Shown: positions 18 to 64,000 of the stretch, piece by piece | Numbering within the stretch: the stretch's first letter is position 1 | Layout: every line of letters starts with the position of its first letter | IMG/VR virus record: IMGVR_UViG_3300026097_000876 | Coordinates: 1 to 64,000 of that record | Reading direction: 5' to 3' (one strand) | DNA length: 64,000 nucleotides | Notes under the pieces: generated by a model | The model's database searches: none | Told to the model about the DNA's origin: nothing | What the model saw: only the letters and a program-made list of their open reading frames with translations | Program-made: the position numbers and the translations under genes

Positions 18-93
<76 letters not shown>

Positions 94-97
94 AATA

Positions 98-172
98 TGG
101 TGGAGGATGGGAGGGTCGAACTCCCGACTTCGCCGTGCAAGGGCAATGTTTTCCCAACTATACTAATCCCCC
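98..172 (-). tRNA. tRNA-Ala(UGC)
   Basis: Anticodon loop CTTGCAC; G3:U70 pair; encoded CCA. Confidence 0.95.
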
Positions 173-176
173 AAAG

Positions 177-260
177 TGGTGGAGAGTGATGGATTCGAAC
201 CACCGCGCAGTTACGACCTGATTTACAGTCAGGTGCTTTCGACCACTCAGCCAACTCTCC
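177..260 (-). tRNA. tRNA-Tyr(GUA)
   Basis: CCTGA-CTGTAAA-TCAGG; long variable arm; CCA. Confidence 0.95.
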
Positions 261-302
261 GCAAACTTGGGACTGTCTTTAAGGCGCAGTCATTCCTTTA
301 AA

Positions 303-379
303 TGGCTCCGGATGAGGGACTCGAACCCCCGCAGACGCGGTTTTGGAGACCGCCGCTCTTCCAACTGAGCTAATCCGGA
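303..379 (-). tRNA. tRNA-Trp(CCA)
   Basis: GCGGT-CTCCAAA-ACCGC; CCA end. Confidence 0.95.
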
Positions 380-385
380 ATAAAA

Positions 386-462
386 TGGTCGGGATTGCTG
401 GATTCGAACCAACGACATCATGCTCCCAAAGCATGCACTCTACCAGACTGAGCTAAACCCCG
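386..462 (-). tRNA. tRNA-Pro(UGG)
   Basis: CATGC-TTTGGGA-GCATG; CCA end. Confidence 0.95.
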
Positions 463-466
463 ATAT

Positions 467-542
467 TGGAGCCACGGACAGGAGTTGCACCTGCATAGTA
501 AGGATTTGCAGTCCTCTGCCTAACTGTTCGAGCCACCGTGGC
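467..542 (-). tRNA. tRNA-Cys(GCA)
   Basis: Anticodon loop CTGCAAA; U73 discriminator; variant T-loop TGCAACT. Confidence 0.9.
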
Positions 543-549
543 GTAAATT

Positions 550-634
550 TGGCGACAGCGTGTAGACGGTGCCTCGCTCCACCGTTTCGTGTCGACCGGG
601 TTACCCCACAGTCCAGATCACTACACTTAACCCA
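550..634 (-). ncRNA. CCA-terminated structured non-tRNA RNA between tRNA-Asn and tRNA-Cys
   Basis: Stems GTGTAG/CTACAC, ACGGTG/CACCGT, GGG-GTAA-CCC; ends GTCGCCA; no T-loop or anticodon arm. Confidence 0.55.
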
Positions 635-640
635 CGAAAG

Positions 641-716
641 TGGCTGCCCGAGCAGGACTCGAACCTGCGACCAAGAGATTAACAGTCTCCTGCTCTACCA
701 ACTGAGCTATCAGGCA
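641..716 (-). tRNA. tRNA-Asn(GUU)
   Basis: GGAGA-CTGTTAA-TCTCT; CCA end. Confidence 0.95.
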
Positions 717-725
717 ATAAACTAA

Positions 726-758
726 TGAGCAGTTTCATCCACACTTGCTCAGGTGTGG
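726..758 (-). ncRNA. Small H-type pseudoknot motif, copy A
   Basis: S1 CCACAC/GTGTGG, S2 TGAGCA/TGCTCA, loop ending AAAC. Confidence 0.6.
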
Positions 759-827
759 CCGGCCGGCATTTGTTAATCGTTAAAAGCCATTAGGTCTTAC
801 AAGCCTGATGCCTAAACAGAGCAGGAA

Positions 828-855
828 CAAGCAGTTTAAAATCATACTCAGGATC
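828..855 (-). ncRNA. Small H-type pseudoknot motif, copy B
   Basis: S1 GATC/GATT, S2 TGAGTA/TGCTTG, loop ending AAAC. Confidence 0.55.
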
Positions 856-901
856 ATCACAATAGGGGAACTCTAAGAGCGCAAACCCTAATGCCTATAC
901 T

Positions 902-1074
902 AAAACACATTAGAAAGTGTGCTTATTTTTATTGCCCGATAGCCTAGGATTTGGCAGGGTCTGTCTAATGCGTCTACAAGGTAGCTAATCCTCTACGACG
1001 AGCTAGGACACTTACAGTTCACGCTGGGGTTACCACACTGAACTCAACCCTAAGCACACTTTCTAATGTATTTT
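902..1074 (-). ncRNA. ~170-nt structured element closed by a 24-bp stem
   Basis: Inverted repeat AAAATACATTAGAAAGTGTGCTTA / TAAGCACACTTTCTAATGTGTTTT (one G.U); internal AGTTCA/TGAACT stem; no ORF; promoter directly upstream. Confidence 0.55.
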
Positions 1075-1075
1075 C

Positions 1076-1120
1076 TCTAACTGTTATACACAGTATAAAG
1101 TCGTGTTATTGTTTTGTCAA
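1076..1120 (-). promoter_or_regulatory. Sigma70-type early promoter
   Basis: TTGACA-17 nt-TATACT followed by GTGTATAACAGTTAG. Confidence 0.8.
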
Positions 1121-1121
1121 C

Positions 1122-1221
1122 CTTATTATAAAGCACACTACGGAATCGAACCGTTTTTTGTGTTGTAACACCTATCGCCACGACCTAGTAGCTACTATAG
1201 GCTAGTGTGCTTTATAATAAG
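1122..1221 (-). ncRNA. tRNA-like element lacking a canonical anticodon arm and CCA
   Basis: 19-bp closing stem, TA-GCCT...AGGT D-like arm, ACGG-TTCGATT-CCGT T-arm. Confidence 0.55.
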
Positions 1222-1321
1222 TGCTGGGCTATCCCCAGCTTGACCTATCTTGTAACATCCAGGCCGCCGCCCATTTATTTTTTATAGTGCTTGTAGGTTC
1301 GCGTTACCATTTGCACTTGCA

Positions 1322-1355
1322 TTAAAAAACCCCGGAGTATTTCTACTTCGGGGTT
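1322..1355 (-). terminator. Intrinsic terminator (part of putative attenuator)
   Basis: AACCCCGAAGTA-GAAA-TACTCCGGGGTT followed by U run. Confidence 0.8.
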
Positions 1356-1381
1356 CCGTATAATCTGTTAACTTAACTAAA

Positions 1382-1480
1382 CTATACGGAACTCCCACGA
1401 TCATAAATCCAACCACAGAACATCCCCGCCGGATTCGACTGGACCTCTGTTGTGTTCTTATGCATCGTTTTGTTCATCAT
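1382..1480 (-). CDS. Putative 32-aa leaderless leader peptide MMNKTMHKNTTEVQSNPAGMFCGWIYDRGSSV
   Basis: ATG 6 nt after the -10 hexamer; stop codon lies in the 5' arm of an antiterminator hairpin. Confidence 0.55.
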   Translation of the reverse strand: MMNKTMHKNTTEVQSNPAGMFCGWIYDRGSSV

Positions 1481-1486
1481 AGTGTT

Positions 1487-1516
1487 ATATTAACCTCGTT
1501 GACTCTGTTTGTCAAC
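1487..1516 (-). promoter_or_regulatory. Sigma70-type promoter with overlapping GTTGAC-N7-GTCAAC palindrome
   Basis: TTGACA-17 nt-TAATAT; dyad at 1498-1516. Confidence 0.65.
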
Positions 1517-1546
1517 CTCTTTTTACCTTTTTATTTATCTTTTTTC

Positions 1547-1621
1547 TGGAGCGGGTAGCGAGAATCGAACTCGCATCTAAGCGTTGGCAACGCTTTGTAA
1601 TAACCATTATACGATACCCGC
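1547..1621 (-). tRNA. tRNA-Gly(GCC)
   Basis: AAGCG-TTGCCAA-CGCTT; U73; CCA. Confidence 0.95.
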
Positions 1622-1628
1622 AATATTT

Positions 1629-1937
1629 TTAAATACGCTGTCCTGGTTCATAAAACTGAAATGTCTTGCCAGCGGCAAACACACAGGCTATGTCATTATC
1701 TTTATTCACAACTATAAAGCTCCAAGACTGTGTTTCTGTGTTTATCCACAGTGACGAATACAGTAAGCTGTCATTTCCCTCAGCAATGCCTTCACTTAGA
1801 AATATTAGTTCTTCGTTGTACTCTTGTTTTATAAAGTCAAGTACTATCTCTGTTTTAGCGCAATCAACTGGAACGTCATATACTTCTGCTTTTGCTGGTG
1901 AGGCGATGAGCAAAAACATCGCCAATAGGTATTTCAT
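1629..1937 (-). CDS. Small secreted hypothetical protein inside the tRNA cluster
   Basis: GGAGAG RBS before ATG 1937; signal peptide MKYLLAMFLLIASPAKA. Confidence 0.7.
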   Translation of the reverse strand: MKYLLAMFLLIASPAKAEVYDVPVDCAKTEIVLDFIKQEYNEELIFLSEGIAEGNDSLLYSSLWINTETQSWSFIVVNKDNDIACVFAAGKTFQFYEPGQRI

Positions 1938-1950
1938 TTTTCTCTCCAAA

Positions 1951-1978
1951 TGAGTAGTTTTAAAACTTACTCAGGTTT
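1951..1978 (-). ncRNA. Small H-type pseudoknot motif, copy C
   Basis: S1 AAAC/GTTT, S2 TGAGTA/TACTCA; ends 3 nt before the RBS of the next gene. Confidence 0.55.
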
Positions 1979-2200
1979 ACCTTTCCTGGGCACCATTTGC
2001 TCAATTGTTTTACAAGGGGAACAAAACCCTTAAAAATTTTTACACAATGCAAAGAGTGAGTGGTTAACCAATGCATCGACCTAGCTACTTGATAAACTAT
2101 GTCTATCTTTCACTACTTTCAGGCGGTTCAGGCCTTTATCGCCGTCTCCCTAAGGAGCTTGTGTCTAGGTCTTTTTATAGTAGTACCGAATCTACATATT

Positions 2201-2277
2201 TGGTGCCGCTGGAGGGAGTCGAACCCCCAACCTTCTGGACCTAAACCAGACGCCTCTGCCAATTGGGCTACAGCGGC
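2201..2277 (-). tRNA. tRNA-Leu(UAG) with short variable loop
   Basis: TCTGG-TTTAGGT-CCAGA; A73; 77 nt; 5-nt variable region. Confidence 0.85.
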
Positions 2278-2291
2278 AAATATCATATTTA

Positions 2292-2382
2292 TGGCGGAGA
2301 TGGAGGGATTCGAACCCTCGATACGCTATTAACGTATACTCCCTTAGCAGGGGAGCGCGATCGACCACTCTGCCACATCTCC
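2292..2382 (-). tRNA. tRNA-Ser(GCU)
   Basis: CTCCC-CTGCTAA-GGGAG; long variable arm; G73; CCA. Confidence 0.95.
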
Positions 2383-5588: not shown

Positions 5589-5630
5589 GTGTGCCTCTAT
5601 ATTTGCCTAACTGTTATATAAAGTATAGTG

Positions 5631-6101
5631 TCAGAATACAAGATTGTCAAGTGTTTCTTTTAGAAATTCAATTTCTTCTTTGTTGTGCTTCCAAGCAAAT
5701 CCGCGGCTTTTAAATAGTCCGAGGCTAGTGTCTATATCATAAACCTTGCCAAAGCTATTGGTCATATTTTCGCTACTAGTTGCTAGGATAGTGGTATCGT
5801 TGGCACGATAGAACTGCCACCATTCGTTGCACTCCATCAATGGACCATCTAGCATAGTAGTATAAGTTTTATGTCGATCTACCAAATGACTACGGTTGAT
5901 ACCCATGCGACTTACTTTCTTATAACCATGTTCAGCAAACACACGTAGGGCATCTTCGGTAATTCCTATCACTTGCCAATGGTCAGGACATAGCGACAAT
6001 AGCTCTCCTAGCATACGAGCCCGTTTACTAGTTGGTGCTCGCATATTGCGAATTAGCAAGTAATCGTGATATAAATCTTCTTTGTTCACTTTTGTGTCCA
6101 C
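5631..6101 (-). CDS. Hypothetical protein
   Basis: 156-aa ORF in the operon. Confidence 0.6.
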   Translation of the reverse strand: MDTKVNKEDLYHDYLLIRNMRAPTSKRARMLGELLSLCPDHWQVIGITEDALRVFAEHGYKKVSRMGINRSHLVDRHKTYTTMLDGPLMECNEWWQFYRANDTTILATSSENMTNSFGKVYDIDTSLGLFKSRGFAWKHNKEEIEFLKETLDNLVF

Positions 6102-6496: not shown

Positions 6497-6554
6497 GTGC
6501 GTCTCTGTGTTTGCCTAACTGTTATATACAGTATAAATTCGTCCGGCAAAAATG

Positions 6555-7712
6555 TCAAGACTTTTTAAATATATAAATGCCTTCACTTTTGTATGCGTTT
6601 TTTAATTTGTTGTTGCCAGTTCCAGGACGGACGTTTAGTAACATATCTATCTGTTCTACATAGTCAAATCCAATTTTTTTACTAACATCCTTCCAGCGAT
6701 CTACAATTTTAAATTCTTCCTTGCCGTCCTTGTAGTCTGCAATATTAACAGCATACAGGCTTTCTTTTGCAAGAGCTGTGTGTAACATCTTAACAGTTGG
6801 CTCTACGTAATTATCAAACCATTCGTCTATTGTGCTACAATTGTTCATACATTGTGTATCTTCATCTGTGTATGTTTCTAAGTTAAAGTAAGGGGGACTA
6901 CTAAATGCGGCATCAAAAGAGCCCGGCTCTGGATCAAAGTCTTCACTAGGCATATGATTCATATCATACCCAGATCCAAGTCCTAATTCTTTCATTAGTT
7001 CGCCTAACGCAACTAACCCGTTGTAAGTTTTTGTATTCGGATCAATTCCTGTATAATGATAACGCATGTTACTAGTAAGAGATCCAATCATTCTTCCACC
7101 GTAGCCAGAGCTAAAATCTAGAACATTACCAAACATTTGAGGACAGATATACTCATACACAGCTCTAGCATTCATAGGTTTAAAGTTTGCAATAGTGCCT
7201 CCGCTTACAAGATCTAATGCTCGACGTATGTTTTGAGGTAATACACTTTTTTCGCCTTCATCTCTATACTTGTAGCAAAAGCTAATAGCACGTTTCAAAC
7301 GAGTGTCATCATAAAATCTTGCTCGCATACTAACCATTTTATCTTTACGAGTGTACGCTTCCTGCATATTAGGAAACCAAAAACGACTGAAAGTTTGTCC
7401 TGCGGTATTTCCTACAGCTATCTTTTTGTCTTTTACTTCGTGTGATTTTTGACTAATTGCTGTTAGTTCTTTTTTACAGCCTTCGAGTGTAAAGTAAGTA
7501 ATAGGAATAACGTTTACGCTTCTGTAAATATTAAAAACATCTTGTACAATTTGATCTCGACCGTTGTCATCTGCTTTGTTCCAGCGATCTTTAGTATAAG
7601 TCTTTAATTGTTCTTCCACACTTTCATAACCAGAATAAGAATCATTAGTCGGTGTCACATTCCATTCTTTACAGATATGATTGTAGTAATTTTCAATTAA
7701 AGTGTTTTGCAT
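6555..7712 (-). CDS. SAM-dependent amino-DNA methyltransferase (SPPY, N4-mC-like)
   Basis: Motif I VLDFSSGYGGR, GIDP, motif IV FSSPPYF. Confidence 0.85.
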   Translation of the reverse strand: MQNTLIENYYNHICKEWNVTPTNDSYSGYESVEEQLKTYTKDRWNKADDNGRDQIVQDVFNIYRSVNVIPITYFTLEGCKKELTAISQKSHEVKDKKIAVGNTAGQTFSRFWFPNMQEAYTRKDKMVSMRARFYDDTRLKRAISFCYKYRDEGEKSVLPQNIRRALDLVSGGTIANFKPMNARAVYEYICPQMFGNVLDFSSGYGGRMIGSLTSNMRYHYTGIDPNTKTYNGLVALGELMKELGLGSGYDMNHMPSEDFDPEPGSFDAAFSSPPYFNLETYTDEDTQCMNNCSTIDEWFDNYVEPTVKMLHTALAKESLYAVNIADYKDGKEEFKIVDRWKDVSKKIGFDYVEQIDMLLNVRPGTGNNKLKNAYKSEGIYIFKKS

Positions 7713-8868
7713 ATATTTCTTTTACCTGTTCCTTGTGCTTGTAATGTGGAATTTTTGACCAAAACCCTGTGCCGTTTGCCGGACTAGTTTCATTTAGACT
7801 TAGCACTAATCTTGTAATTTCTTTGCTATTGTAGTAATTAATTATTTCTTCTGCTTCTTGTTTGTCTTCAACCTGAATCCAAATTGCATTATGTCCAGTT
7901 CCGTATTCTGGACTAGCATATTTTAGTGTGCTCTTAGTATTTCGATTACCATTCTTACTGATAACAACTTTGTGTACACCAACGCCTTCACGGGGTGTAA
8001 TAATGCTTTTGTCTACACCAACTGTTTTCCTAAAGTCAGCGCCTTCAGTTCCTACTTGATAGATTAGTTGCACATCGCCGGGATTGTTAATAATTTTTTT
8101 ATCGTTGATATAATATGATCCATAATTTGCTGTAAATGTTTCAAAATTCTGTTCGAACAGTTCTTTCGCAAACATATAGGTCTTCAAATCAAATGCTGGA
8201 AGATATGTAGGATTATCAACAATAACACTAGTGTCATCCGTAATAAACTCTACACTATTATTTGTTTTTGCTGTGAAATACATAGCACAAATCGGTGTGG
8301 TAGTTTTAGTTACTCCTAAGAATCTATATTTTGTAATTTCTCTTATGTGTTGTTTCTTGGTGTAACGATTTTTATTCGGACGGGTAAGGACCAGTACGTG
8401 GTCGCATGTTTCTTTAAACTTGGATACAAAACTATTTGTTGTTAAAAAGTCTATAGCACTTAATACTACAGTATGTGAAGATTGAACGTCAATATAATCT
8501 TGTTGCAAAACATTCACATTAAATGTTTTATTGTTTAGTGCTTTTTTAAAATTAGTCTTACAAACTAATGTTTGTAAATTATCAATATCACTTGCATATA
8601 ATTGGTTACTAAAAATATGTTCGATACGTTCAATTTCGTCTGGAATAGCTGGCGATAGCGTAGACATTAAACGTTGAGCAAGATACATTAGTAATGTTCC
8701 ACTACCACACTGTGGATCAAAATATGTAGTAGCAGGATCCGAAAGTAAACTATTGTCCAATAAGTCAATTGCATTCTTAGCAAATTGTTCTTCAATAATA
8801 GTTTGTGATCCGCTACTGTCGTATGCTTTTAATTGTGCAAGACGATTGTTTATATTATTGATGGTCAA
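7693..8868 (-). CDS. N6-adenine methyltransferase-like protein with degenerate catalytic motif
   Basis: Motif I FDPQCGSGTLL and YASDID; expected NPPY position reads SAIDF. Confidence 0.65.
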   Translation of the reverse strand: MTINNINNRLAQLKAYDSSGSQTIIEEQFAKNAIDLLDNSLLSDPATTYFDPQCGSGTLLMYLAQRLMSTLSPAIPDEIERIEHIFSNQLYASDIDNLQTLVCKTNFKKALNNKTFNVNVLQQDYIDVQSSHTVVLSAIDFLTTNSFVSKFKETCDHVLVLTRPNKNRYTKKQHIREITKYRFLGVTKTTTPICAMYFTAKTNNSVEFITDDTSVIVDNPTYLPAFDLKTYMFAKELFEQNFETFTANYGSYYINDKKIINNPGDVQLIYQVGTEGADFRKTVGVDKSIITPREGVGVHKVVISKNGNRNTKSTLKYASPEYGTGHNAIWIQVEDKQEAEEIINYYNSKEITRLVLSLNETSPANGTGFWSKIPHYKHKEQVKEIYAKHFN

Positions 8869-11011
8869 AGTATTGTCCTAACGCTCGATTTGCTGAAACA
8901 GTGTTTATAGTATTCATTATACTTGACCATTCGTCAGTTGTCAATCCCGTAACTTGTGCTACAATGCCATTGTCTATATTTGTTACATCTTGTATCTTGT
9001 CAAATTCAAAGTCATTAGCCCAAGCAATGTCTGCTAGTTTATAAATCTGTTTTAAACTATAGCGAATACGTTGCATAGTTACATTTAACTCATCCTCATC
9101 TCTAGCTTCAGGTTGAGCCGAATTTGTCTTAGAACGTGTTTTATTTTTGCCTTCTTCAATATCGTTAGCATTAAATTGTGTTCTGCTACTATTACTATTA
9201 GCGTCTTTGTTTTTATCTTGTAACAGTGCAATAATGTTATCATCAATTTCATTTTGTTTAATACAAGATCCAATGCGATCAATATGGTTGGTAATATCTG
9301 ACAGGAAACGTTTTGAAATTTCTGCACCTGACATAATGTTCCATGCATTACCGTCATAATCATATACATCGCTTACTTCTAACCATTCACTAATTACTGA
9401 TTCAGCGGTACGTCCTGTAGTGTCTGCAACACGCTCGCAATAATCGTACACTACACTAACAAAACGTTCAGGCGCATAATCAAATACTACTACACTTTCT
9501 TTTCCGTCTGCCGGCGACTTACAACGGAAACTACCTTGAAAGTAATCTGCCGCACTCTTGTCGTTATTAATTTGATGTACACTCCACCATTCAGGTACAG
9601 TAGTGCCTTCTAAGAAGCGTCCGCATGTGAGTGTAATAGTGCCGGCGCCACCGTCATGGTCGTTGCGAGAAATTATATCTTTTACTTTTTGTATATTCTT
9701 AACGCCTTTTCCACTTGCATTAATAATCTTACGTTTACAAAAGAACGGATGTGCTTCTAATGCTTGTGCAAATAACCCAATTGCTTCCACGTTATCAGGC
9801 AATACAAATAGTGTATGACGGCTAAGTTTGTCAGCAACATTACTAAATCTTGATGGTGGTTTTTTAAAGTTTTTCATAATAAATGTAATAAACTCATTTA
9901 CACCCATTACATTTTTAAAAGAACCATTTTCAGTTGCAAACAATTTAGAAAATGTAAATCCTTCGTCGCCGAGTAGCTGTTTTACTTTTTCCGGAACATT
10001 AACTAATGCATAGTTGATGTCAGCACGTTTGCGAAACTGATCTGTTAAGAAGTTGTCTTCGTTTGCTTCTAAAAGTTCTTTCCGTATATTTTGTTCGTCG
10101 ATATAATCAAAATTATATGTATCTTCTGAAGCGTATCGTCCACTTAGCATAGTCTTGTACGGAGTTCCGCTTAATTCAACTTTAAGTTTAAATTTTAGAT
10201 TACTCCAAAGACGTTGTGTGTTGTCGGTTGATGTAGCATAATGTTGTTCATCAAAAAATACACTGTCCCATTGTGTGTCAAACATTTGTTTTAAGAACTT
10301 ATTATTACTACCAAAATGTTTATTGATAAACTGTAAACTAACAAACACAACATCAGTGCCTGTAAATTCCAAAGACTTAGTTGTTTTATAGTTGTGGTAT
10401 TTCCAGCCAGCATAGTCAATGTGGTTCTCTTCTCCACCCGGCAATAAACTTGCCCAACTATCATTAACACCTACTTTTGCTGTAACTACTAAAATTTTCT
10501 TAGCACCAAGTGCTCGTGCAATTTCATAGCTAATACGACACTTACCGGCTCGCATAATAGCATTTATAAGCAAGTCACTAGATACCGAACTACGAGTTAC
10601 GGCCCAGTCGATAATGTCTTGTTGATAATCAAAACTATTCCAATCTTCTAGAGCTTCTACGCCATTAATAAGACCGTTGAGTACTTCTCGAACTGTTTTA
10701 CTAGCATCCTTTGCTGTTATGCTGTCAGGAAAATCAAACCATTCACGGTTCTTATCGTCGCGACTTTTAAAATAACCTTTGCGTTGGAGAGTTTTATGTA
10801 ATGCAATATCAGTAATATGCGTAGGAACTTGTCTTGAATAAATTATTTCTAATTTTTCAGAATTCGATGTGCTATCTTGTTGCTCAACCCGTTCTTCTGC
10901 TGTAAGCATAGTCTGTCCAACTTTAAGTTTTACATTGAAAACTTCACCGTCGACTGTTGCTACGCTTTGTTTGCTTTGACTTTTTGTAGTGTAAAGATAG
11001 ATTGTGTTCAT
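8855..11011 (-). CDS. T5orf172/GIY-YIG-like domain fused to SF2 (Res-type) helicase
   Basis: IYLY...KVGQT...REWF N-terminus; MRAGK, FFDEQH, LSGTPY, FLEGTTVPEW. Confidence 0.8.
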   Translation of the reverse strand: MNTIYLYTTKSQSKQSVATVDGEVFNVKLKVGQTMLTAEERVEQQDSTSNSEKLEIIYSRQVPTHITDIALHKTLQRKGYFKSRDDKNREWFDFPDSITAKDASKTVREVLNGLINGVEALEDWNSFDYQQDIIDWAVTRSSVSSDLLINAIMRAGKCRISYEIARALGAKKILVVTAKVGVNDSWASLLPGGEENHIDYAGWKYHNYKTTKSLEFTGTDVVFVSLQFINKHFGSNNKFLKQMFDTQWDSVFFDEQHYATSTDNTQRLWSNLKFKLKVELSGTPYKTMLSGRYASEDTYNFDYIDEQNIRKELLEANEDNFLTDQFRKRADINYALVNVPEKVKQLLGDEGFTFSKLFATENGSFKNVMGVNEFITFIMKNFKKPPSRFSNVADKLSRHTLFVLPDNVEAIGLFAQALEAHPFFCKRKIINASGKGVKNIQKVKDIISRNDHDGGAGTITLTCGRFLEGTTVPEWWSVHQINNDKSAADYFQGSFRCKSPADGKESVVVFDYAPERFVSVVYDYCERVADTTGRTAESVISEWLEVSDVYDYDGNAWNIMSGAEISKRFLSDITNHIDRIGSCIKQNEIDDNIIALLQDKNKDANSNSSRTQFNANDIEEGKNKTRSKTNSAQPEARDEDELNVTMQRIRYSLKQIYKLADIAWANDFEFDKIQDVTNIDNGIVAQVTGLTTDEWSSIMNTINTVSANRALGQYFDHQ

Positions 11012-11031: not shown

Positions 11032-11079
11032 TGTGCCTGATTACTCTACTATAATATAATCAGGCACACGGTTTGTCAA
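11032..11079 (-). promoter_or_regulatory. Sigma70 promoter with -10 enclosed by a 12-bp inverted repeat
   Basis: TTGACA-17-TATTAT; arms TGTGCCTGATTA / TAATCAGGCACA. Confidence 0.75.
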
Positions 11080-11101: not shown

Positions 11102-11662
11102 TTAAATGTTTTGCAAATATTTTAATACTTTCTTTGGATCTGTTTCTCCGTAAGGATCGTCATCGTCACCGCAATCATTAATGCCTGGCTCTTCGAACCA
11201 TTTCTCCACTACACCGTCCTTGATTACTGCGGCATATCGCCAAGAGCGATTACCAAAGCCGACATGATCTTTGCATACTAACATGCCCATGCGCTGAGTA
11301 AGTTGACCCGAGCCGTCTGGAATAAATTTAATATGCTGAATACCTTGATCAATCATCCACTTGCGCATAACAAAAGTGTCGTTTACTGAAACAACATATA
11401 TTTCGTCAACGTCACAGTTGCGAATGTCATCGTACAATTCTTCAAATCCGGGTACTTGATACGTACTGCAGGTCGGAGTAAATGCTCCGGGTAGCGAAAA
11501 AACAACGATTCTCTTGTTGTTAAAAATTTCGTCAGTTGTAACTTCTTTCCAGTCAAATGGGTTTTCACTTCCATTGTTATTGTTTACATATGTTATAGGG
11601 TGTCCGTCTGTACGAACACGATAATGAAAAGTAACTGGTGGTACTTTTACGCCTTCTTTCAT
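11102..11662 (-). CDS. Peroxiredoxin (Prx5 family)
   Basis: FSLPGAFTPTCS, VSVNDTFVM, RSWRYA. Confidence 0.9.
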   Translation of the reverse strand: MKEGVKVPPVTFHYRVRTDGHPITYVNNNNGSENPFDWKEVTTDEIFNNKRIVVFSLPGAFTPTCSTYQVPGFEELYDDIRNCDVDEIYVVSVNDTFVMRKWMIDQGIQHIKFIPDGSGQLTQRMGMLVCKDHVGFGNRSWRYAAVIKDGVVEKWFEEPGINDCGDDDDPYGETDPKKVLKYLQNI

Positions 11663-27306: not shown

Positions 27307-27753
27307 TTAGTTGCGACGCATTTGCGCAATTTCTTTGGCTTGTTCTTTGTTGTCTTCGAAGATTGGAACCATGTTGCTCTTGTGCATTGTGGCTATTCCG
27401 AGGAGTCGTCTTTCTCCTGAGTAGACTTGGGTTTCTCTTTTGGCTGCGACTCCTGGGACTTGATTCGACGTTTCGAGGCTTCGATGCTTCTCTGTGTTGC
27501 GGACATACGATTGGGTTGGCGCATAGGTTTTAAACTCCTTTTCTTCCTTACGCTTTGGTGGGTTGCCTTGTGTATATGCTACGTAATCTTCAAACACATC
27601 GTACTGTAAACTGTGCATATTCTTTTGGCGCATACGTTTGTTGTATTGACGCCATTCAACTCGAAGAGCTTCGAGCTGTTTATTTGTAGGCTTCTTAGCT
27701 TTGCGCTTCTTAGTACTAATTGTAGATAGCCCGCGGGCTAAATGCATAGTCAT
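27307..27753 (-). CDS. Conserved T4-like phage hypothetical protein
   Basis: GIATMHKSNMVPIF C-terminal motif; own promoter at 27788-27816. Confidence 0.7.
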   Translation of the reverse strand: MTMHLARGLSTISTKKRKAKKPTNKQLEALRVEWRQYNKRMRQKNMHSLQYDVFEDYVAYTQGNPPKRKEEKEFKTYAPTQSYVRNTEKHRSLETSNQVPGVAAKRETQVYSGERRLLGIATMHKSNMVPIFEDNKEQAKEIAQMRRN

Positions 27754-27822
27754 AAAAAAACTCCTGCTTGTTTAACTTAATGTAAACACTATAGCAGGAG
27801 TCTAGTAGGTTGTCAAGTATTT

Positions 27823-51172: not shown

Positions 51173-51284
51173 AAACAAAAAAGCGCCAAAAATATAATAG
51201 GCGCTTTTTTCTTGACATAAATAAAAGACTACGTTATATTAATAATGTAGTACACACTACACACAGACACATAGGAGAAATACA

Positions 51285-60382: not shown

Positions 60383-60439
60383 CAGTCCAACAAGCGCGAA
60401 GCGTCCAAAAAAAATTTCACACTCAGTGTAAATATCTAT

Positions 60440-60661
60440 ATGTACATAGAGTTCACACAAGTTAAAAACGCTGGCTTTCATCGACACACACTGCGCAATG
60501 ATATCTTCGACAAGCTGACTAGCATACATACTCCCTATAGTGTAGACAGTGACATTCCTGATGAGCTGGTTGTGTACATGGCAGATCGATACTATACTAT
60601 ATTCTGTATACAATGGAATCCCCACAGTAAGATCTACTATGCATACACAGCACACAAGTAA
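60440..60661 (+). CDS. Small hypothetical protein
   Basis: 73-aa ORF after a GTAAATA motif. Confidence 0.4.
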   Translation: MYIEFTQVKNAGFHRHTLRNDIFDKLTSIHTPYSVDSDIPDELVVYMADRYYTIFCIQWNPHSKIYYAYTAHK

Positions 60662-60664
60662 GAG

Positions 60665-60949
60665 CGCATATACAAAGGCCCCGCACAAGAGAGCTTTATA
60701 TATACTCGCAAGCTCGCATATACAAAGGCCCCGCTGCTAGCTATACACAAAACAAAATTTCCTTGAGGCCCCGCTGCTAGTATCACGGTATCACACACAC
60801 TCTATACAGTGTAGATGCTTGCCGTAGAAAGACTGTGTGTCTAGGTTGATTTTATAGTGTGACTAGGTTGAATCTAGCGTGGGAAGAACCGTAAAAAGCG
60901 TTTGAAAGAAAGGTAAAAAGTATTTGAGAGAAAGGTAAAAAGTATTTGA
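60665..60949. repeat. Direct repeats: CGCATATACAAAGGCCCCGC x2, AGGCCCCGCTGCTAG x2, GAAAGGTAAAAAGTATTTGA x2
   Basis: Positions 60665/60715, 60726/60766, 60908/60930. Confidence 0.85.
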
Positions 60950-61355
60950 ACTATGCCTCTCGTCACCACGGTCAAGAAATTTTTTTTTGGCTATAGATCG
61001 TGCCAGAACCGTAATGCGAATAATTCTTATTTAACATTAGGCCTACAGTATTGGCACCGTAAACCCACCATTAAACTGTCTGAGAACTCGGCCTCTGTGG
61101 GGATAGATCTCTTACTAGCTATACAGTATACAGAGTGTGTGTATAGTATAGTGTAGCATGTTATACAATGTGACCGTTAGCGTAGTGTACGGTGTGTAGT
61201 GTATGGTATAGTGTGTATAGCTACTATAGTGCATAGTGACTTATTGCATACTGTGTGTTTGGCTGTGTGATCTAAATGCGAATTATTTGCATTTAGGCCT
61301 CTGCACTTTTTGTGTATAACTTGTGTATAAGTGTGTGCGAGAATATTGTGTGTAA

Positions 61356-61712
61356 AATCAAACACTTAGCAAATCTTGTGTAAAATCAAGCACTTAGCTC
61401 TGTGCATAAGTCCGCCGTTCGCCGCCTCGTTTGCGTTCGTCCCGTGTAAGTTATTGTTTTTGTTGAGGATTTTGTGTTCGTTTTGTTCTTTCTAAACAAG
61501 CACTTATGTGTTGTGGATAAGCTGTGGATAACTTTTGCGAGGGGTGCGCATAATGTGTATTATGTTAAATGAGAATTGGATGAGGAACGTGCGCTAAGTG
61601 TTTGATATTGTTGAGGTGGGGCCGTGCGCATTTAACATAATACCGGCCGTGTGCGCATATAATATATTATGTTAAATGAAGGTGGGGCGACTTGTGGACA
61701 AGCTGTGGATAA
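61356..61712. promoter_or_regulatory. Cluster of DnaA boxes and IHF consensus sites
   Basis: TGTGGATAA at 61512, 61523 and 61704, TGTGGACAA at 61693; WATCAANNNNTTR at 61356, 61384 and 61595 (minus strand). Confidence 0.75.
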
Positions 61713-61782
61713 CTTTCGGTTCGCGCACCCTCCCTCCTTGTACTCCGGTCTCTTCGTTCCCGCTTGTATGTTTTGTGCCTTT

Positions 61783-61828
61783 GCCCTAACTGTTATATAC
61801 AGTATACGGCCTCGCCGCCAAAAAGTCA
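61783..61828 (-). promoter_or_regulatory. Leftward sigma70 promoter pointing into the DnaA-box cluster
   Basis: TTGACT-17-TATACT-GTATATAACAGTTAGG; no convincing downstream ORF. Confidence 0.7.
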
Positions 61829-62002
61829 ACCTTCTGAGGTCTTGTAAGTCATTGTTTCGTAAGGGAAAAATAAATTAAAAAAAGTTTTTTTCCTCTGTGT
61901 TTTCAATAGCTTACAAAAAAAATAATGCTTGCTTTTTTGCGCAAACGAGGCTATACTGCTTATACAGTAAAAAATTAACTTAAACTATATAGAGGGCTAT
62001 AT

Positions 62003-62368
62003 ATGCAAAACTTTACACAAGCAGCACTTGCAGACGTGCAAGCACTAGTTAACACTTACGCTAATATTGCGGGCGATTACGAAGCAACGCTGTTATGCGG
62101 CGTATGGCACTACATGTGCGACAGCGGCATATACACAGACGCATTTAGCGAAGCAGATGCGGAGTATGTAGAAGCGCACTACGACAACAATGTGCAATAC
62201 TACAACGACGACGATTGCGGCTACACAGACGCATTTTATGCTGTAATATTTGACGACGATAAATTGCAATGCAATGCAGTGTTACAAGCACAAGATGCAA
62301 TTGCAAACAAGCATAATTTGCATAACGAAGATGTTGCACGTATGTGTATGCAACTAGAAGCAAGTTAA
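62003..62368 (+). CDS. Acidic early protein
   Basis: TTGCTT/TATACT promoter, AGAGGG RBS; 21 D/E versus 3 K/R. Confidence 0.75.
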   Translation: MQNFTQAALADVQALVNTYANIAGDYEATLLCGVWHYMCDSGIYTDAFSEADAEYVEAHYDNNVQYYNDDDCGYTDAFYAVIFDDDKLQCNAVLQAQDAIANKHNLHNEDVARMCMQLEAS

Positions 62369-62448
62369 TTGTAAAAAACACTTGACAGCAGCATGCTTTT
62401 GTAGTATGCTGCTGCATATACACTAAAAAATTGCAAAGAGGGCAAACT

Positions 62449-62901
62449 ATGCAATACAACAAGATTTTTACAAACTGCGCTGTAGTAAGCGACGAGAATT
62501 TTGACTTGCTTACAGCAGAACAGCTAGAAGCATTTACACAAGCGGAACGTGCTTTTGTGCTTGTGTTTTTAGCAGACACACTTGCAAACTTGACACAGGT
62601 TAACGCAGACTGTGCAGTAGAAAACGACAACTACTTTGTGCGACTAGCGGATGCGCAGGAGGTTATGCAAAATTTGCAAATGCTGTACGACACACTAGAC
62701 GACAGCGACGACTGTACAAATATACAGTTTACGCTAGCGGATGCGGGTGCTGCGCTGTGTAGTTACGACACAGAATACAGGGAATGCATAGCGGAGCAAT
62801 TTGAAGACGCATGCGACAACGCTGCTAAACTTGCAAAGCAAACTGGCAACACAAACGCAGACTACAGCACACTTGCTGTGCGTGTGCTGTGTAGTTATTA
62901 A
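62449..62901 (+). CDS. Acidic early protein
   Basis: TTGACA/TATGCT promoter 62382-62410, AGAGGG RBS; 26 D/E versus 7 K/R. Confidence 0.75.
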   Translation: MQYNKIFTNCAVVSDENFDLLTAEQLEAFTQAERAFVLVFLADTLANLTQVNADCAVENDNYFVRLADAQEVMQNLQMLYDTLDDSDDCTNIQFTLADAGAALCSYDTEYRECIAEQFEDACDNAAKLAKQTGNTNADYSTLAVRVLCSY

Positions 62902-62973
62902 AAAGGGGTTGACAAATGTGTTTATGTGTGCTACTATGTACACATAAACAATTAATTGCAAAGAGGGCACGCT

Positions 62974-63177
62974 ATGCAAAAACTAAACGAAAAAGCACTA
63001 CAGCAGTGGAACGCAACACGGCGTTTTATGCGTACACTAGACGAAGCGCAGCTGCATTTATTAATAGCGGCGCTAGACGGCGACAACAAGTTGCAAGTTA
63101 CGCAAACGCTAGTAGACAGCGCATATGACGCAATAGACGACAACATGCGCAAACAATATGCACAACACTTAAAATAG
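62974..63177 (+). CDS. Small early protein
   Basis: TTGACA/TACTAT promoter 62909-62937, AGAGGG RBS. Confidence 0.75.
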   Translation: MQKLNEKALQQWNATRRFMRTLDEAQLHLLIAALDGDNKLQVTQTLVDSAYDAIDDNMRKQYAQHLK

Positions 63178-63241
63178 GGGTTGACAACTGTGCATATTGT
63201 GTTATACTGTATGCACAGTTAAACAATATAGAGGGCACTAT

Positions 63242-63502
63242 ATGCAAAACACTACATACTATCCTGCCGCAGTCGCAAACGTTATAACACATTACGCACA
63301 AGCAATTGCACGTGCTAGTTATGACAGCGTAGTGGAAGCAGGCGACTACAGCATAACAGACAACTGTGCAAAAATACAGTACCTGTTGTCTGCTAGTGCG
63401 CAACACACCTCAGTTAAAAGTCTAGCAGTTGCCGCACTAAACAGCGCAGAGGATACAGTGCTGCGCGAATGCATGTACACACAATTAATGCAACACGCAT
63501 AA
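63242..63502 (+). CDS. Small early protein
   Basis: TTGACA/TG-TATACT promoter 63181-63208, AGAGGG RBS. Confidence 0.75.
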   Translation: MQNTTYYPAAVANVITHYAQAIARASYDSVVEAGDYSITDNCAKIQYLLSASAQHTSVKSLAVAALNSAEDTVLRECMYTQLMQHA

Positions 63503-63635
63503 TCTAAATAAGAATCATTTGCATTTAGGAGGCTGTAAATAATTACAGTCTTCTTTTTGCAAATTAGGGGTTGACAGGCGCAACCTTTGAGACTATACTG
63601 TATAAACAATGAAGCATTAGAGAGAGGGTTTTGAA

Positions 63636-63920
63636 ATGCGAGTAGTTGAGCAATATGGCATGTTTACCGACGCTGGTGACAAGATGGTAGACCGCATAGT
63701 ACGTGCCGCACTCCAGTTGGGGCAAGAGCAGGCAGCTACCAATGCCGATGTGTGGGGATTTGCATATCGCGAGTTGGAGAAGCTCCAGACCAGCTTAGAG
63801 TTCTCGGAAGCAACAGACACCGTAGTACGTGAGGAAGTGTTCTCAGCACTGTGGGACAACCTTCCAGGATTTAATCTAACAGAAGAAGAGTACTGGTTCT
63901 TTGTTGAGGAGACAGCGTAA
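63636..63920 (+). CDS. Small early protein
   Basis: TTGACA-17-TATACT promoter at ~63571-63599, AGAGGG RBS. Confidence 0.75.
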   Translation: MRVVEQYGMFTDAGDKMVDRIVRAALQLGQEQAATNADVWGFAYRELEKLQTSLEFSEATDTVVREEVFSALWDNLPGFNLTEEEYWFFVEETA

Positions 63921-64000
63921 TGATGAATCAATATTTCGTTTACTATGATGGTCGGTTCCAAGGAACTGTGATGGCACTGAGTGAACAGAGTGCAAAGCAA

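What the first reader, a model, noticed from the sequence alone, without database searches (positions are those of the whole stretch)
62382..63220. Sigma70 promoters whose -10 lies inside promoter-specific inverted repeats
Seen: CAGCAGCAT/ATGCTGCTG (62386/62406), TGTTTATGTGT/ACACATAAACA (62919/62940) and AACTGTGCATA/TATGCACAGTT (63186/63210). The same design appears at 11032-11068 (12 bp) and 27760-27801 (9 bp, right arm is the SD). In each case one arm lies in the -35/-10 spacer and the other at or after the start site, and the arm sequences are unrelated, so structure rather than sequence is conserved. There are no U tracts. Known: N4 uses DNA hairpin promoters, and T4 uses upstream arms to occlude RBSs on read-through mRNA. 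Inference: a supercoiling- or ssDNA-dependent cruciform switch for early promoters, or processing hairpins in read-through RNA.
Basis: partly seen in the sequence, partly recalled or inferred. Interest (0 to 1): 0.7.

Follow-up and report, generated by a model that had tools for sequence, protein, structure and literature searches.

The report
Promoters overlaid with upstream-gene RNA hairpins
Three strong early promoters of an uncultured T4-like giant phage are each overlaid with a hairpin that most likely forms in RNA read through from the gene upstream, a compact promoter/stem-loop cassette boundary of the kind already described as "PeSL" in other T4-like phages.

Summary
The three inverted repeats sit at the stated coordinates inside near-consensus sigma70 promoters. 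They are far beyond chance: 3 perfect repeats of 11 bp or more in 1.6 kb against 0.03-0.06 expected.

The design is not general in this genome, where about 5 of 85 promoter-like sites carry it. It is very common in a clade of marine relatives that carry the same arrays of small unknown genes: 106 of 389 distinct promoters.

Evidence that the stems act on one strand, most likely as sense RNA:
- Stems tolerate G·U but almost never A·C (46:1).
- Several stems have cUUCGg loops.
- Arms co-vary, including a spacer base with a -10 base.

After homologues of the neighbouring gene there is always a hairpin. It is embedded in the promoter when the gap is about 73 nt. It is a separate A-tract/stem/T-tract terminator when the gap is about 128 nt. 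So the hairpin belongs to the upstream transcript, as a terminator/attenuator or a 3'-end protector.

The same promoter-hairpin element joins different gene pairs in different phages.

All of this matches the published PeSL elements of T4-like phages (PMC2839356, PMC4122927), and the genome encodes a T4 gp23-type capsid protein. The cruciform and N4-like readings are not supported. It is a new member of a known kind.

The parts
62003..62368 (+). g1, 121-aa gene of unknown function; first gene of the + strand early array; its stop codon lies 13 nt before the next -35
   Evidence: no Pfam or PHROG match
62382..62410 (+). sigma70-type promoter: TTGACA (62382-62387), 17-nt spacer, TATGCT (62405-62410)
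   Evidence: 10 of 12 matches
62386..62414 (+). Hairpin 1: 12-bp stem including one G·U (G62395·T62405), 5-nt loop. The left arm starts in the -35, the right arm contains the whole -10, and the stem ends before the start site.
   Evidence: -21.2 kcal/mol, z -4.1
62449..62901 (+). g2, 150-aa gene of unknown function, with 45-83% identical homologues in 78 marine/estuarine metagenome contigs
62909..62937 (+). sigma70-type promoter: TTGACA, 17-nt spacer, TACTAT (62932-62937), with TG upstream of the -10
62919..62950 (+). Hairpin 2: 13-bp stem (11 perfect pairs plus G·U plus C-G). The loop is exactly the -10 hexamer. The left arm lies in the spacer and the right arm over the start-site region.
   Evidence: -17.6 kcal/mol; covariation in relatives
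62974..63177 (+). g3, 67-aa gene of unknown function
63181..63208 (+). sigma70-type promoter: TTGACA, 16-nt spacer, TATACT, with TG upstream of the -10
   Evidence: 11 of 12 matches
63186..63220 (+). Hairpin 3: 11-12 bp stem with the -10 in the loop. An identical element occurs in other phage contigs between unrelated genes.
   Evidence: (-18.8 kcal/mol)
63242..63502 (+). g4, 86-aa gene of unknown function
63517..63564 (+). Separate terminator-like hairpin with a T run, lying just upstream of the next promoter (63571-63599). It occupies the same slot after a gene but is not embedded; the gap here is 133 nt.
   Evidence: -23 kcal/mol, z -5.3
11032..11079 (-). Same design on the minus strand: promoter TTGACA (11079-11074) and TATTAT (11056-11051), 12-bp hairpin 11068-11057/11043-11032 with the -10 in the loop. 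It lies between two co-directional genes (11102-11662 and 8855-11011).
   Evidence: -22.6 kcal/mol, z -6.3
27753..27816 (-). Related design on the minus strand: promoter TTGACA (27816-27811) and TATAGT (27793-27788). The 9-bp hairpin has a right arm that contains the SD (AGGAG), followed by a U run and then the ATG at 27753.
   Evidence: -19.1 kcal/mol

Best explanation
These are PeSL-type composite elements: a strong host-sigma70 early promoter and an RNA stem-loop written into the same roughly 45 bp between two tandem small genes. The hairpin does not belong to the promoter it overlaps. Its left arm lies upstream of that promoter's start site, so it forms only in transcripts coming from the cassette upstream. 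There it most likely attenuates or terminates read-through, blocks 3' exonucleases, or both, so that each cassette behaves as its own transcription unit. Because the gap is only 64-80 nt, the arms sit in the positions a sigma70 promoter leaves free (the spacer and the initially transcribed bases), with the -10 in the loop. In a second class the spacer has become complementary to the TGn-extended -10 itself. The element is also the unit at which cassettes are exchanged between related phages. Shown here: the structure, the one-strand signature, covariation, equivalence of slot with ordinary terminators, and shuffling. Inferred: that the strand acts as RNA, and that the effect is termination or stabilisation.
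For: (1) The repeats are not chance: across 241 promoter-like sites, 12 stems score 9.5 or more against 0.17 in shuffles that keep the hexamers. (2) In 389 distinct promoters of the clade, 106 carry a stem. G·T interruptions outnumber A·C 46:1 (37:1 over distinct stems), against 1.3:1 in shuffles and 2.6:1 in random sense windows. (3) cUUCGg or uUUCGg loops occur in several different stems. (4) Covariation: in the class between -35 and -10 (42 sequences), 98.6% of cells pair and 7 pairs change on both sides; spacer base 1 against -10 base 5 is C-G in 27 and G-C in 15, never unpaired. In the family of the window's 62909 element, 97.7% of cells pair and 5 pairs show compensatory changes. (5) After 65 distinct homologues of g2 there is always a hairpin. 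It is embedded in the promoter in 47 (median gap 73 nt) and is a separate A-tract/stem/T-tract terminator in 18 (median gap 128 nt). (6) All five cases in this genome lie between co-directional genes. (7) Elements nearly identical to 62909 and 63181 join at least 6 and 4 different gene pairs in other contigs. (8) The flanking genes have no Pfam or significant PHROG match. The genome has a T4 gp23-type capsid gene. (9) Published PeSLs have stem-loops 'most commonly between the -35 and -10 or overlapping the -10', with G-T pairs, and one such stem-loop cut lacZ expression as much as rrnB T1 (PMC2839356).
Against: No transcript data exist for this phage; no RNA run was listed. The embedded hairpins have no U tract, with a mean of 2.5 T in the 8 nt after the stem, which is the background level, so they are not canonical intrinsic terminators. 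Termination and 3'-end protection cannot be told apart here. A G·T versus A·C bias would also arise from a hairpin in single-stranded sense-strand DNA. The covariation alignments were chosen for having a stem, and their sequences are related, so the counts lean towards the structure. Most promoters of this genome lack the hairpin although they too follow co-directional genes.
Confidence: 0.7

Rival explanations
1. Translational gating in the T4 gene e / soc / 49 style: in read-through RNA the upstream arm sequesters the ribosome-binding site of the next gene, so only transcripts from the embedded promoter are translated.
For: At 27760-27801 the right arm contains the SD AGGAG, 7 nt before the ATG. 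Outside the window, a stem at G000:C1 219023-219054 covers the SD/ATG of the next gene.
Against: In the three main cases and at 11032 the SD (AGAGGG) and the AUG lie 10-25 nt beyond the stem. In the commonest class among relatives the stem ends 2 nt after the -10.
Confidence: 0.07
2. The hairpin is a folded single-stranded DNA recombination site, analogous to an integron attC site, or a target of a structure-specific enzyme. It makes the small-gene cassettes mobile, and any RNA role is secondary.
For: The same element joins different gene pairs. Structure is conserved while arm sequence varies. The one-strand G·T bias is also what a single-stranded DNA site would show. PeSL-bounded mini-circles were reported for RB49/phi1, and a specific recombinase was suggested there (PMC2839356).
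Against: UUCG loops are an RNA stability motif (general knowledge). A canonical terminator fills the same slot when space allows, which points to a transcript-level role. The 30-50 bp of shared promoter and 5'-UTR sequence suffice for homologous recombination in T4-type phages. No recombinase was looked for or found.
Confidence: 0.08
3. A DNA cruciform or supercoil-dependent switch extrudes the -10 or -35 and turns the early promoter on or off.
For: The repeats overlap promoter elements. A few relatives have 12-bp arms with only 4-nt loops.
Against: A ratio of 46 G·T to 1 A·C means the complementary strand would carry A·C mismatches. The window's loops are 5-13 nt, which disfavours extrusion (general knowledge). 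The promoters are canonical sigma70. No PF00940 RNA polymerase was found. The slot is interchangeable with an ordinary terminator.
Confidence: 0.04
4. The palindromes are operators for dimeric repressors, or they create an antisense -10 and so a bidirectional promoter.
For: In the class between -35 and -10 the reverse strand carries a TGnTATAGT-like sequence. Palindromes overlapping a -10 are typical operators.
Against: Arm sequences are unrelated between the window's promoters, so no single protein could read them. G·U-only interruptions weaken the antisense copy. Loops of 10-13 nt are not operator-like.
Confidence: 0.03

Closest known systems
PeSLs (promoter-early stem-loops) of T4-like phages RB49/phi1, T4/PST and KVP40/nt-1 (Arbiol et al. 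2010, PMC2839356; Comeau et al. 2014, PMC4122927)
   Same: The layout is the same: stop codon in an A/T-rich stretch, near-consensus sigma70 promoter, a stem-loop between the -35 and -10, overlapping either box or just upstream, stems containing G-T pairs, then SD and start codon of a small gene of unknown function. The elements are repeated between tandem cassettes in a variable region of a T4-type genome and sit at the points where gene content differs between relatives.
   Different: Published stems are short and follow a consensus (Gn-loop-Cn; A3-4G3-loop-C3T3-4; AGNA-loop-TCNT). Here the stems are 9-14 bp and specific to an element family, often with the -10 as the exact loop, or with the spacer complementary to the extended -10 and UUCG loops. 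The host phage is an uncultured marine/estuarine T4-like phage whose record is 262 kb (estimated 73% complete). Terminator activity and mini-circles were not tested here.
T4 gene e, soc, 49 and I-TevI hairpins (RBS hidden in early read-through RNA, with a late promoter inside the hairpin); from general knowledge
   Same: A promoter lies inside an inverted repeat, so its own transcript lacks the left arm while read-through RNA folds.
   Different: In those cases the right arm hides the SD/AUG and the inner promoter is a late one. Here the inner promoter is an early sigma70 promoter, and the SD/AUG is outside the stem except at 27760-27801.
Intrinsic (Rho-independent) terminators and 3' stabiliser hairpins
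   Same: A stable hairpin lies a few nucleotides after a stop codon. In relatives with longer gaps the same slot holds a textbook A-tract/stem/T-tract terminator, as at 63517-63564 in the window.
   Different: The embedded hairpins have no U tract.
N4 early promoters (DNA hairpins read by the virion RNA polymerase); from general knowledge
   Same: A hairpin-forming inverted repeat lies at a promoter.
   Different: N4 hairpins have 5-7 bp stems and 3-nt loops, act as single-stranded template DNA, and carry no sigma70 boxes. Here the boxes are consensus sigma70 and the signature is on the sense strand.
Integron attC sites; from general knowledge
   Same: Imperfect inverted repeats separate small cassettes, with structure conserved more than sequence and a one-strand bias.
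   Different: attC sites are 57-141 bp with conserved R/L boxes and extrahelical bases and need an IntI integrase. None of this was seen or tested here, and these elements carry promoters.

Membership tests
PeSL (promoter-early stem-loop) | Near-consensus sigma70 -35/-10 with about 17-nt spacing | tested here: met
   10-11 of 12 matches at 62382, 62909 and 63181; 24 pattern matches in the window against 4.2 expected
PeSL (promoter-early stem-loop) | Stem-loop between the -35 and -10, overlapping either box, or directly flanking them | tested here: met
   all positional classes are seen in relatives
PeSL (promoter-early stem-loop) | Stop codon of the upstream gene in an A/T-rich stretch before the -35; SD and start codon of the downstream gene at the 3' end | tested here: met
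   stops lie 3-13 nt before the -35, and AGAGGG-N6-7-ATG follows
PeSL (promoter-early stem-loop) | Flanks small genes of unknown function in a variable region of a T4-type phage genome | tested here: met
   g1-g5 have no Pfam match and no significant PHROG match; gp23-type capsid PF07068 at E 1e-81; gene order is shuffled among relatives
PeSL (promoter-early stem-loop) | Lies at points of insertion, deletion or replacement between related phages | tested here: met
   62909-type and 63181-type elements join at least 6 and 4 different gene pairs
PeSL (promoter-early stem-loop) | Stem sequence follows a family consensus (for example Gn-loop-Cn) | tested here: not met
   the window's arms are unrelated to one another; only the relatives' class between -35 and -10 has conserved arms, and those are dictated by the promoter boxes
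PeSL (promoter-early stem-loop) | The stem-loop reduces downstream expression (terminator/attenuator) and the promoter is active | not testable with these tools
   no RNA run was listed; only indirect support from equivalence of slot with canonical terminators
PeSL (promoter-early stem-loop) | Cassette mini-circles formed by exchange between neighbouring elements | not tested
Intrinsic terminator | G+C-rich stem followed directly by a U tract | tested here: not met
   no + strand terminator call in 61800-64000; mean 2.5 T in the 8 nt after embedded stems. The feature is met only at 27760-27801 and 63517-63564.
N4-type hairpin promoter | 5-7 bp stem with a 3-nt loop, read by a phage virion RNA polymerase, without sigma70 boxes | tested here: not met
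   stems are 9-13 bp with loops of 5-13 nt inside sigma70 promoters; no PF00940 match (weak negative, because the control genomes gave no match either)
T4 gene e-type RBS occlusion | The right arm pairs with the SD or start codon of the downstream gene | tested here: not met
   not met at 62386, 62919, 63186 and 11032; met at 27760-27801
DNA cruciform switch | Both strands can form the hairpin (symmetric tolerance of mismatches) | tested here: not met
   46 G·T against 1 A·C

The most novel reading that the evidence does not exclude
The embedded hairpins do two jobs. As RNA they end or protect the upstream transcript. As folded single-stranded DNA of the same strand they are the actual crossover sites, in the manner of integron attC sites, which let promoter-plus-gene cassettes excise as circles and re-insert. 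That would make these arrays a phage counterpart of an integron without a known integrase.
Probability: 0.06. Interest if true: 0.8.

Novelty: new member of a known kind. Interest (0 to 1): 0.35.

Why it matters
The finding shows that the PeSL design is not confined to a few cultured T4-like phages. It is used heavily by an uncultured marine clade of large T4-type phages.

The metagenomic sample gives sequence-only evidence that the published work lacked:
- a strand-specific wobble bias;
- UUCG loops;
- compensatory changes, including between a spacer base and a -10 base;
- strict interchangeability with ordinary terminators, depending on gap length.

It is a clear natural case of two signals, a promoter and an RNA hairpin, packed into the same 45 bp. 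That is useful for annotating early regions of phage genomes and for designing compact insulated expression cassettes. It does not reveal a new kind of mechanism.

Tried and rejected
- **Phage database searches.** Megablast and blastn of the region against 50,697 phage records gave nothing useful. The only hit was a 38-bp match in two Vibrio phage records.
- **tblastn of large window proteins.** This gave only weak or no hits.
- **Broad viral-contig pattern scan.** A scan for GGGTTGACW-N17-TATACT returned mostly unrelated single hits and was not used.
- **Rfam.** At gathering thresholds it finds only tRNAs in the window.
- **RNA runs.** None was listed for the region, so no reads were laid.
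- **Sense versus antisense folding energy.** Over all promoter windows the sense strand folds better (p 1e-5). Shuffles show almost the same bias (-0.61 against -0.87 kcal/mol), so I dropped this test in favour of the mismatch-type count.
- **Random genomic windows as a folding control.** They were unsuitable because they are richer in G+C than promoter windows.
- **Alternative pairing around 63181.** The segment 63186-63200 can also pair with 63153-63164 or 63236-63246. Relatives with the same element have different upstream sequence, so I treat this as not conserved.
- **RNase III processing.** Considered unlikely because the stems are only 9-14 bp (general knowledge).
- **The 4986-aa ORF as an N4-like virion polymerase.** Pfam finds only an FG-GAP repeat.
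- **First promoter of an array as a clean negative.** This failed, because those promoters carry weak 6-bp stems of their own.

Full report
**What the window is**

The window is the first 64 kb of a 261,806-bp single-contig virus record. The record is classed as linear and about 73% complete, and it encodes a T4 gp23-type major capsid protein (PF07068, E 1e-81). It is therefore a large uncultured T4-type phage.

Positions 60.4-62.0 kb are non-coding. On the + strand, from 62003, there follows a run of small genes:
- g1, 62003-62368
- g2, 62449-62901
- g3, 62974-63177
- g4, 63242-63502
- g5, 63636-63920

Each starts ATGCAA or similar and is preceded by AGAGGG. None has a Pfam match or a significant PHROG match.

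**The observation**

Each lies inside a strong sigma70-type promoter:

| Promoter | Boxes | Hairpin | Geometry |
|---|---|---|---|
| 62382 | TTGACA-17-TATGCT | 62386-62397 / 62403-62414, 12 bp with one G·U | Starts in the -35, contains the whole -10, ends before the start site |
| 62909 | TTGACA-17-TACTAT | 62919-62931 / 62938-62950, 13 bp | The loop is exactly the -10 hexamer |
| 63181 | TTGACA-16-TATACT | 63186-63196 / 63210-63220, 11 bp | The -10 is in the loop |

As RNA the three fold at -21.2, -17.6 and -18.8 kcal/mol, with z from -3.4 to -4.1. The one at 27760-27801 is followed by a run of U, and its right arm holds the SD.

**Is it more than chance?**

- The genome has 18 perfect repeats of 11 bp or more (loop 3-30), against about 2.5 in Markov simulations of order 1, 3 and 5.
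- Region 62003-63600 has 3, against 0.03-0.06 in local Markov models of order 1-4. None of 1000 simulations reached 3.
- Of 85 promoter-like sites in the genome, 4 carry a repeat of 9 bp or more, against 0.64% of random windows.

So the design is strongly enriched, but about 95% of this phage's promoters lack it. Most neighbouring promoters at 64-71 kb show no strong stem. Those at 63571 and 69159 instead have a separate terminator-like hairpin just upstream.

**Relatives**

A conserved 5'-UTR motif and the g2 protein led to related viral contigs (L003-L022, L025). They also led to 78 metagenome contigs with g2 homologues at 45-83% identity (L142-L220). These carry the same promoter family and the same kinds of small genes in shuffled order.

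Across 241 TTGAC[AT] sites in the genome and the viral contigs, I compared stems with shuffles that keep the two hexamers fixed:

| Stem score | Observed | In shuffles |
|---|---|---|
| 8 or more | 20 | 3.1 |
| 9.5 or more | 12 | 0.17 |
| 11 or more | 8 | 0 |

With the metagenome loci added, 106 of 389 distinct 17-nt-spacer promoters carry a stem. The stems fall into three positional classes:
- Between the tail of the -35 and 2 nt past the -10 (43 cases).
- Around the -10, which then sits in the loop, as in the window.
- Around the -35.

In L003, five consecutive cassettes each have their own stem in a different register.

**Which molecule folds?**

I detected stems with a rule that penalises G·T and A·C equally. 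The interruptions are 46 G·T against 1 A·C, or 37:1 over distinct stems. The ratio is 1.3:1 in shuffled windows and 2.6:1 in random sense-strand windows. Each G·T on the sense strand is an A·C on the other strand, so the structure is selected on the sense strand only. That rules out a two-strand cruciform.

Several different stems close on cUUCGg or uUUCGg loops. This points to RNA as the folding molecule, since UUCG stability is an RNA property (general knowledge).

Covariation agrees:
- In the 42-sequence class between the boxes, 98.6% of cells pair and 7 of 12 pairs change on both sides. The first spacer base pairs with base 5 of the -10 as C-G in 27 sequences and G-C in 15, never unpaired. 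One-sided changes are all to G·U.
- In the family of the window's 62909 element, 97.7% of cells pair and 5 pairs carry compensatory changes.

These alignments were picked for having a stem, and the sequences are related, so the shuffle counts overstate significance. The slid-register controls and the specific compensatory pairs are the useful part.

**Whose hairpin is it?**

The left arm always lies upstream of the embedded promoter's start site. The stem can therefore form only in RNA that began further upstream. All five cases in this genome sit between co-directional genes.

The most telling result comes from the 65 distinct intergenic regions that follow g2 homologues:
- Every one has a hairpin.
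- In 47 it is embedded in the next promoter, and the median gap is 73 nt.
- In 18 it is a separate A-tract/stem/T-tract terminator upstream of the -35, and the median gap is 128 nt.

The embedded hairpin and an ordinary terminator thus occupy the same functional slot. The hairpin is best read as the 3' structure of the upstream gene's transcript, squeezed onto the next promoter when space is short. The arms use the positions that sigma70 does not read, or they copy the extended -10 in reverse in the spacer.

The embedded stems have no U tract. I therefore cannot say whether they terminate, attenuate or only protect 3' ends.

**Cassette exchange**

Elements within 2 mismatches of the 62909 promoter-hairpin occur between at least six different pairs of genes:
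- g2-like and g3-like
- g2-like and two other genes
- g4-like and g2-like
- g4-like and another gene
- others and g3-like

The 63181 element is identical in L003 and L018 between unrelated genes. A close variant lies in front of g2 homologues in L143 and L150.

**Comparison with what is known**

This is the anatomy of PeSLs (promoter-early stem-loops) described in RB49/phi1 and later in T4/PST and KVP40/nt-1. Published features (PMC2839356 and PMC4122927):
- G-T pairs in the stems.
- A position next to genes of unknown function in hyperplastic regions.
- A stem-loop that lowered lacZ expression as much as rrnB T1.
- Recombination between elements that yielded mini-circles.

All structural and contextual features of that family are met here. 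The one exception is a consensus stem sequence: the window's arms are long and specific to each element. The functional features could not be tested.

**Rejected or minor readings**

- A cruciform or N4-like promoter is contradicted by the strand bias, the loop sizes and the canonical sigma70 boxes. No single-subunit RNA polymerase was detected (weak negative). The 4986-aa ORF shows only an FG-GAP repeat.
- RBS occlusion fits 27760-27801 only.
- A single-stranded DNA recombination site of the attC type is not excluded, but it is less likely given the UUCG loops and the equivalence with terminators.

**Verdict**

It is already explained in kind by PeSLs, so it is a new member of a known kind.

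Noticed in passing
window 61311-61712 (within the non-coding stretch 60383-62002): A cluster of DnaA-box sequences: 3 of the window's 5 perfect TTATCCACA plus 4 one-mismatch copies, in tandem pairs (61512/61523, 61693/61704). It lies at the point where transcription diverges, with a minus-strand promoter at 61829 and the + strand array from about 61940. It looks like a DnaA-dependent replication origin, which would be unusual for a T4-type phage (sequence).
   Followed up: partly
window 60676-60774; also L003 about 1030 (minus strand), L022 about 5450, L219 after the g2 stop: The motif AGGCCCCGC(TG) occurs three times within 100 bp (0.05 expected). It recurs in relatives in short non-coding stretches right after a promoter-hairpin element with no obvious ORF. 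It could be a small RNA or an origin iteron. Unexplained.
   Followed up: partly
window 61760-61806 (minus strand), 5620-5650, 6530-6558; L001 (G000 64001-84000) at many promoters: About 15 early promoters share a conserved box after the -10: TATACT-GTATATAACAGTTAGGGCAAAGAGGGCA...ATG. It contains the palindrome ACTGT-N5-ACAGT overlapping the -10 and start site. The exact 25-mer is found in 18 IMG/VR loci. It may be a common operator or a 5'-UTR/translation signal. The 63181 hairpin looks like a derivative of this box.
   Followed up: partly
window 18-2382, minus strand: An array of 10 tRNA genes (Thr, Ala, Tyr, Trp, Pro, Cys, Asn, Gly, Leu, Ser) at the start of the record.
   Followed up: no
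window 62003-63502, and cassette genes in L003, L022, L025, L142-L220: The small cassette genes have a peculiar composition: 34% A on the sense strand and rich in GCA, ACA and CAA codons. Nearly all start ATGCAA (Met-Gln) after AGAGGGC-N5-6. This suggests a shared pool of exchangeable early genes.
   Followed up: no
window 63153-63164 with 63189-63200, and 63191-63201 with 63236-63246: The left arm of hairpin 3 can also pair with the end of the g3 coding sequence (12 bp perfect) or with the g4 start-codon region (11 nt, 91%). Relatives with the same element lack the upstream partner, so this is probably not conserved.
   Followed up: partly
L222 (G000:C1:218900-219500), repeat at genome 219023-219054: An 11-bp perfect inverted repeat between two + strand genes in the structural part of the genome. 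The loop and right arm cover the SD and the first bases of the ATG of the next gene, which is a candidate translational-occlusion hairpin.
   Followed up: no
window 51177-51240: An A6-GCGCC...GGCGC-T6 bidirectional terminator abuts the -35 of a TTGACA-17-TATATT promoter. It is the 'hairpin upstream of the -35' version of the same composite layout.
   Followed up: no
L221 (G000:C1:197045-212005): A 4986-aa ORF whose only Pfam match is one FG-GAP repeat. It is probably a giant structural or adhesin-like protein.
   Followed up: partly
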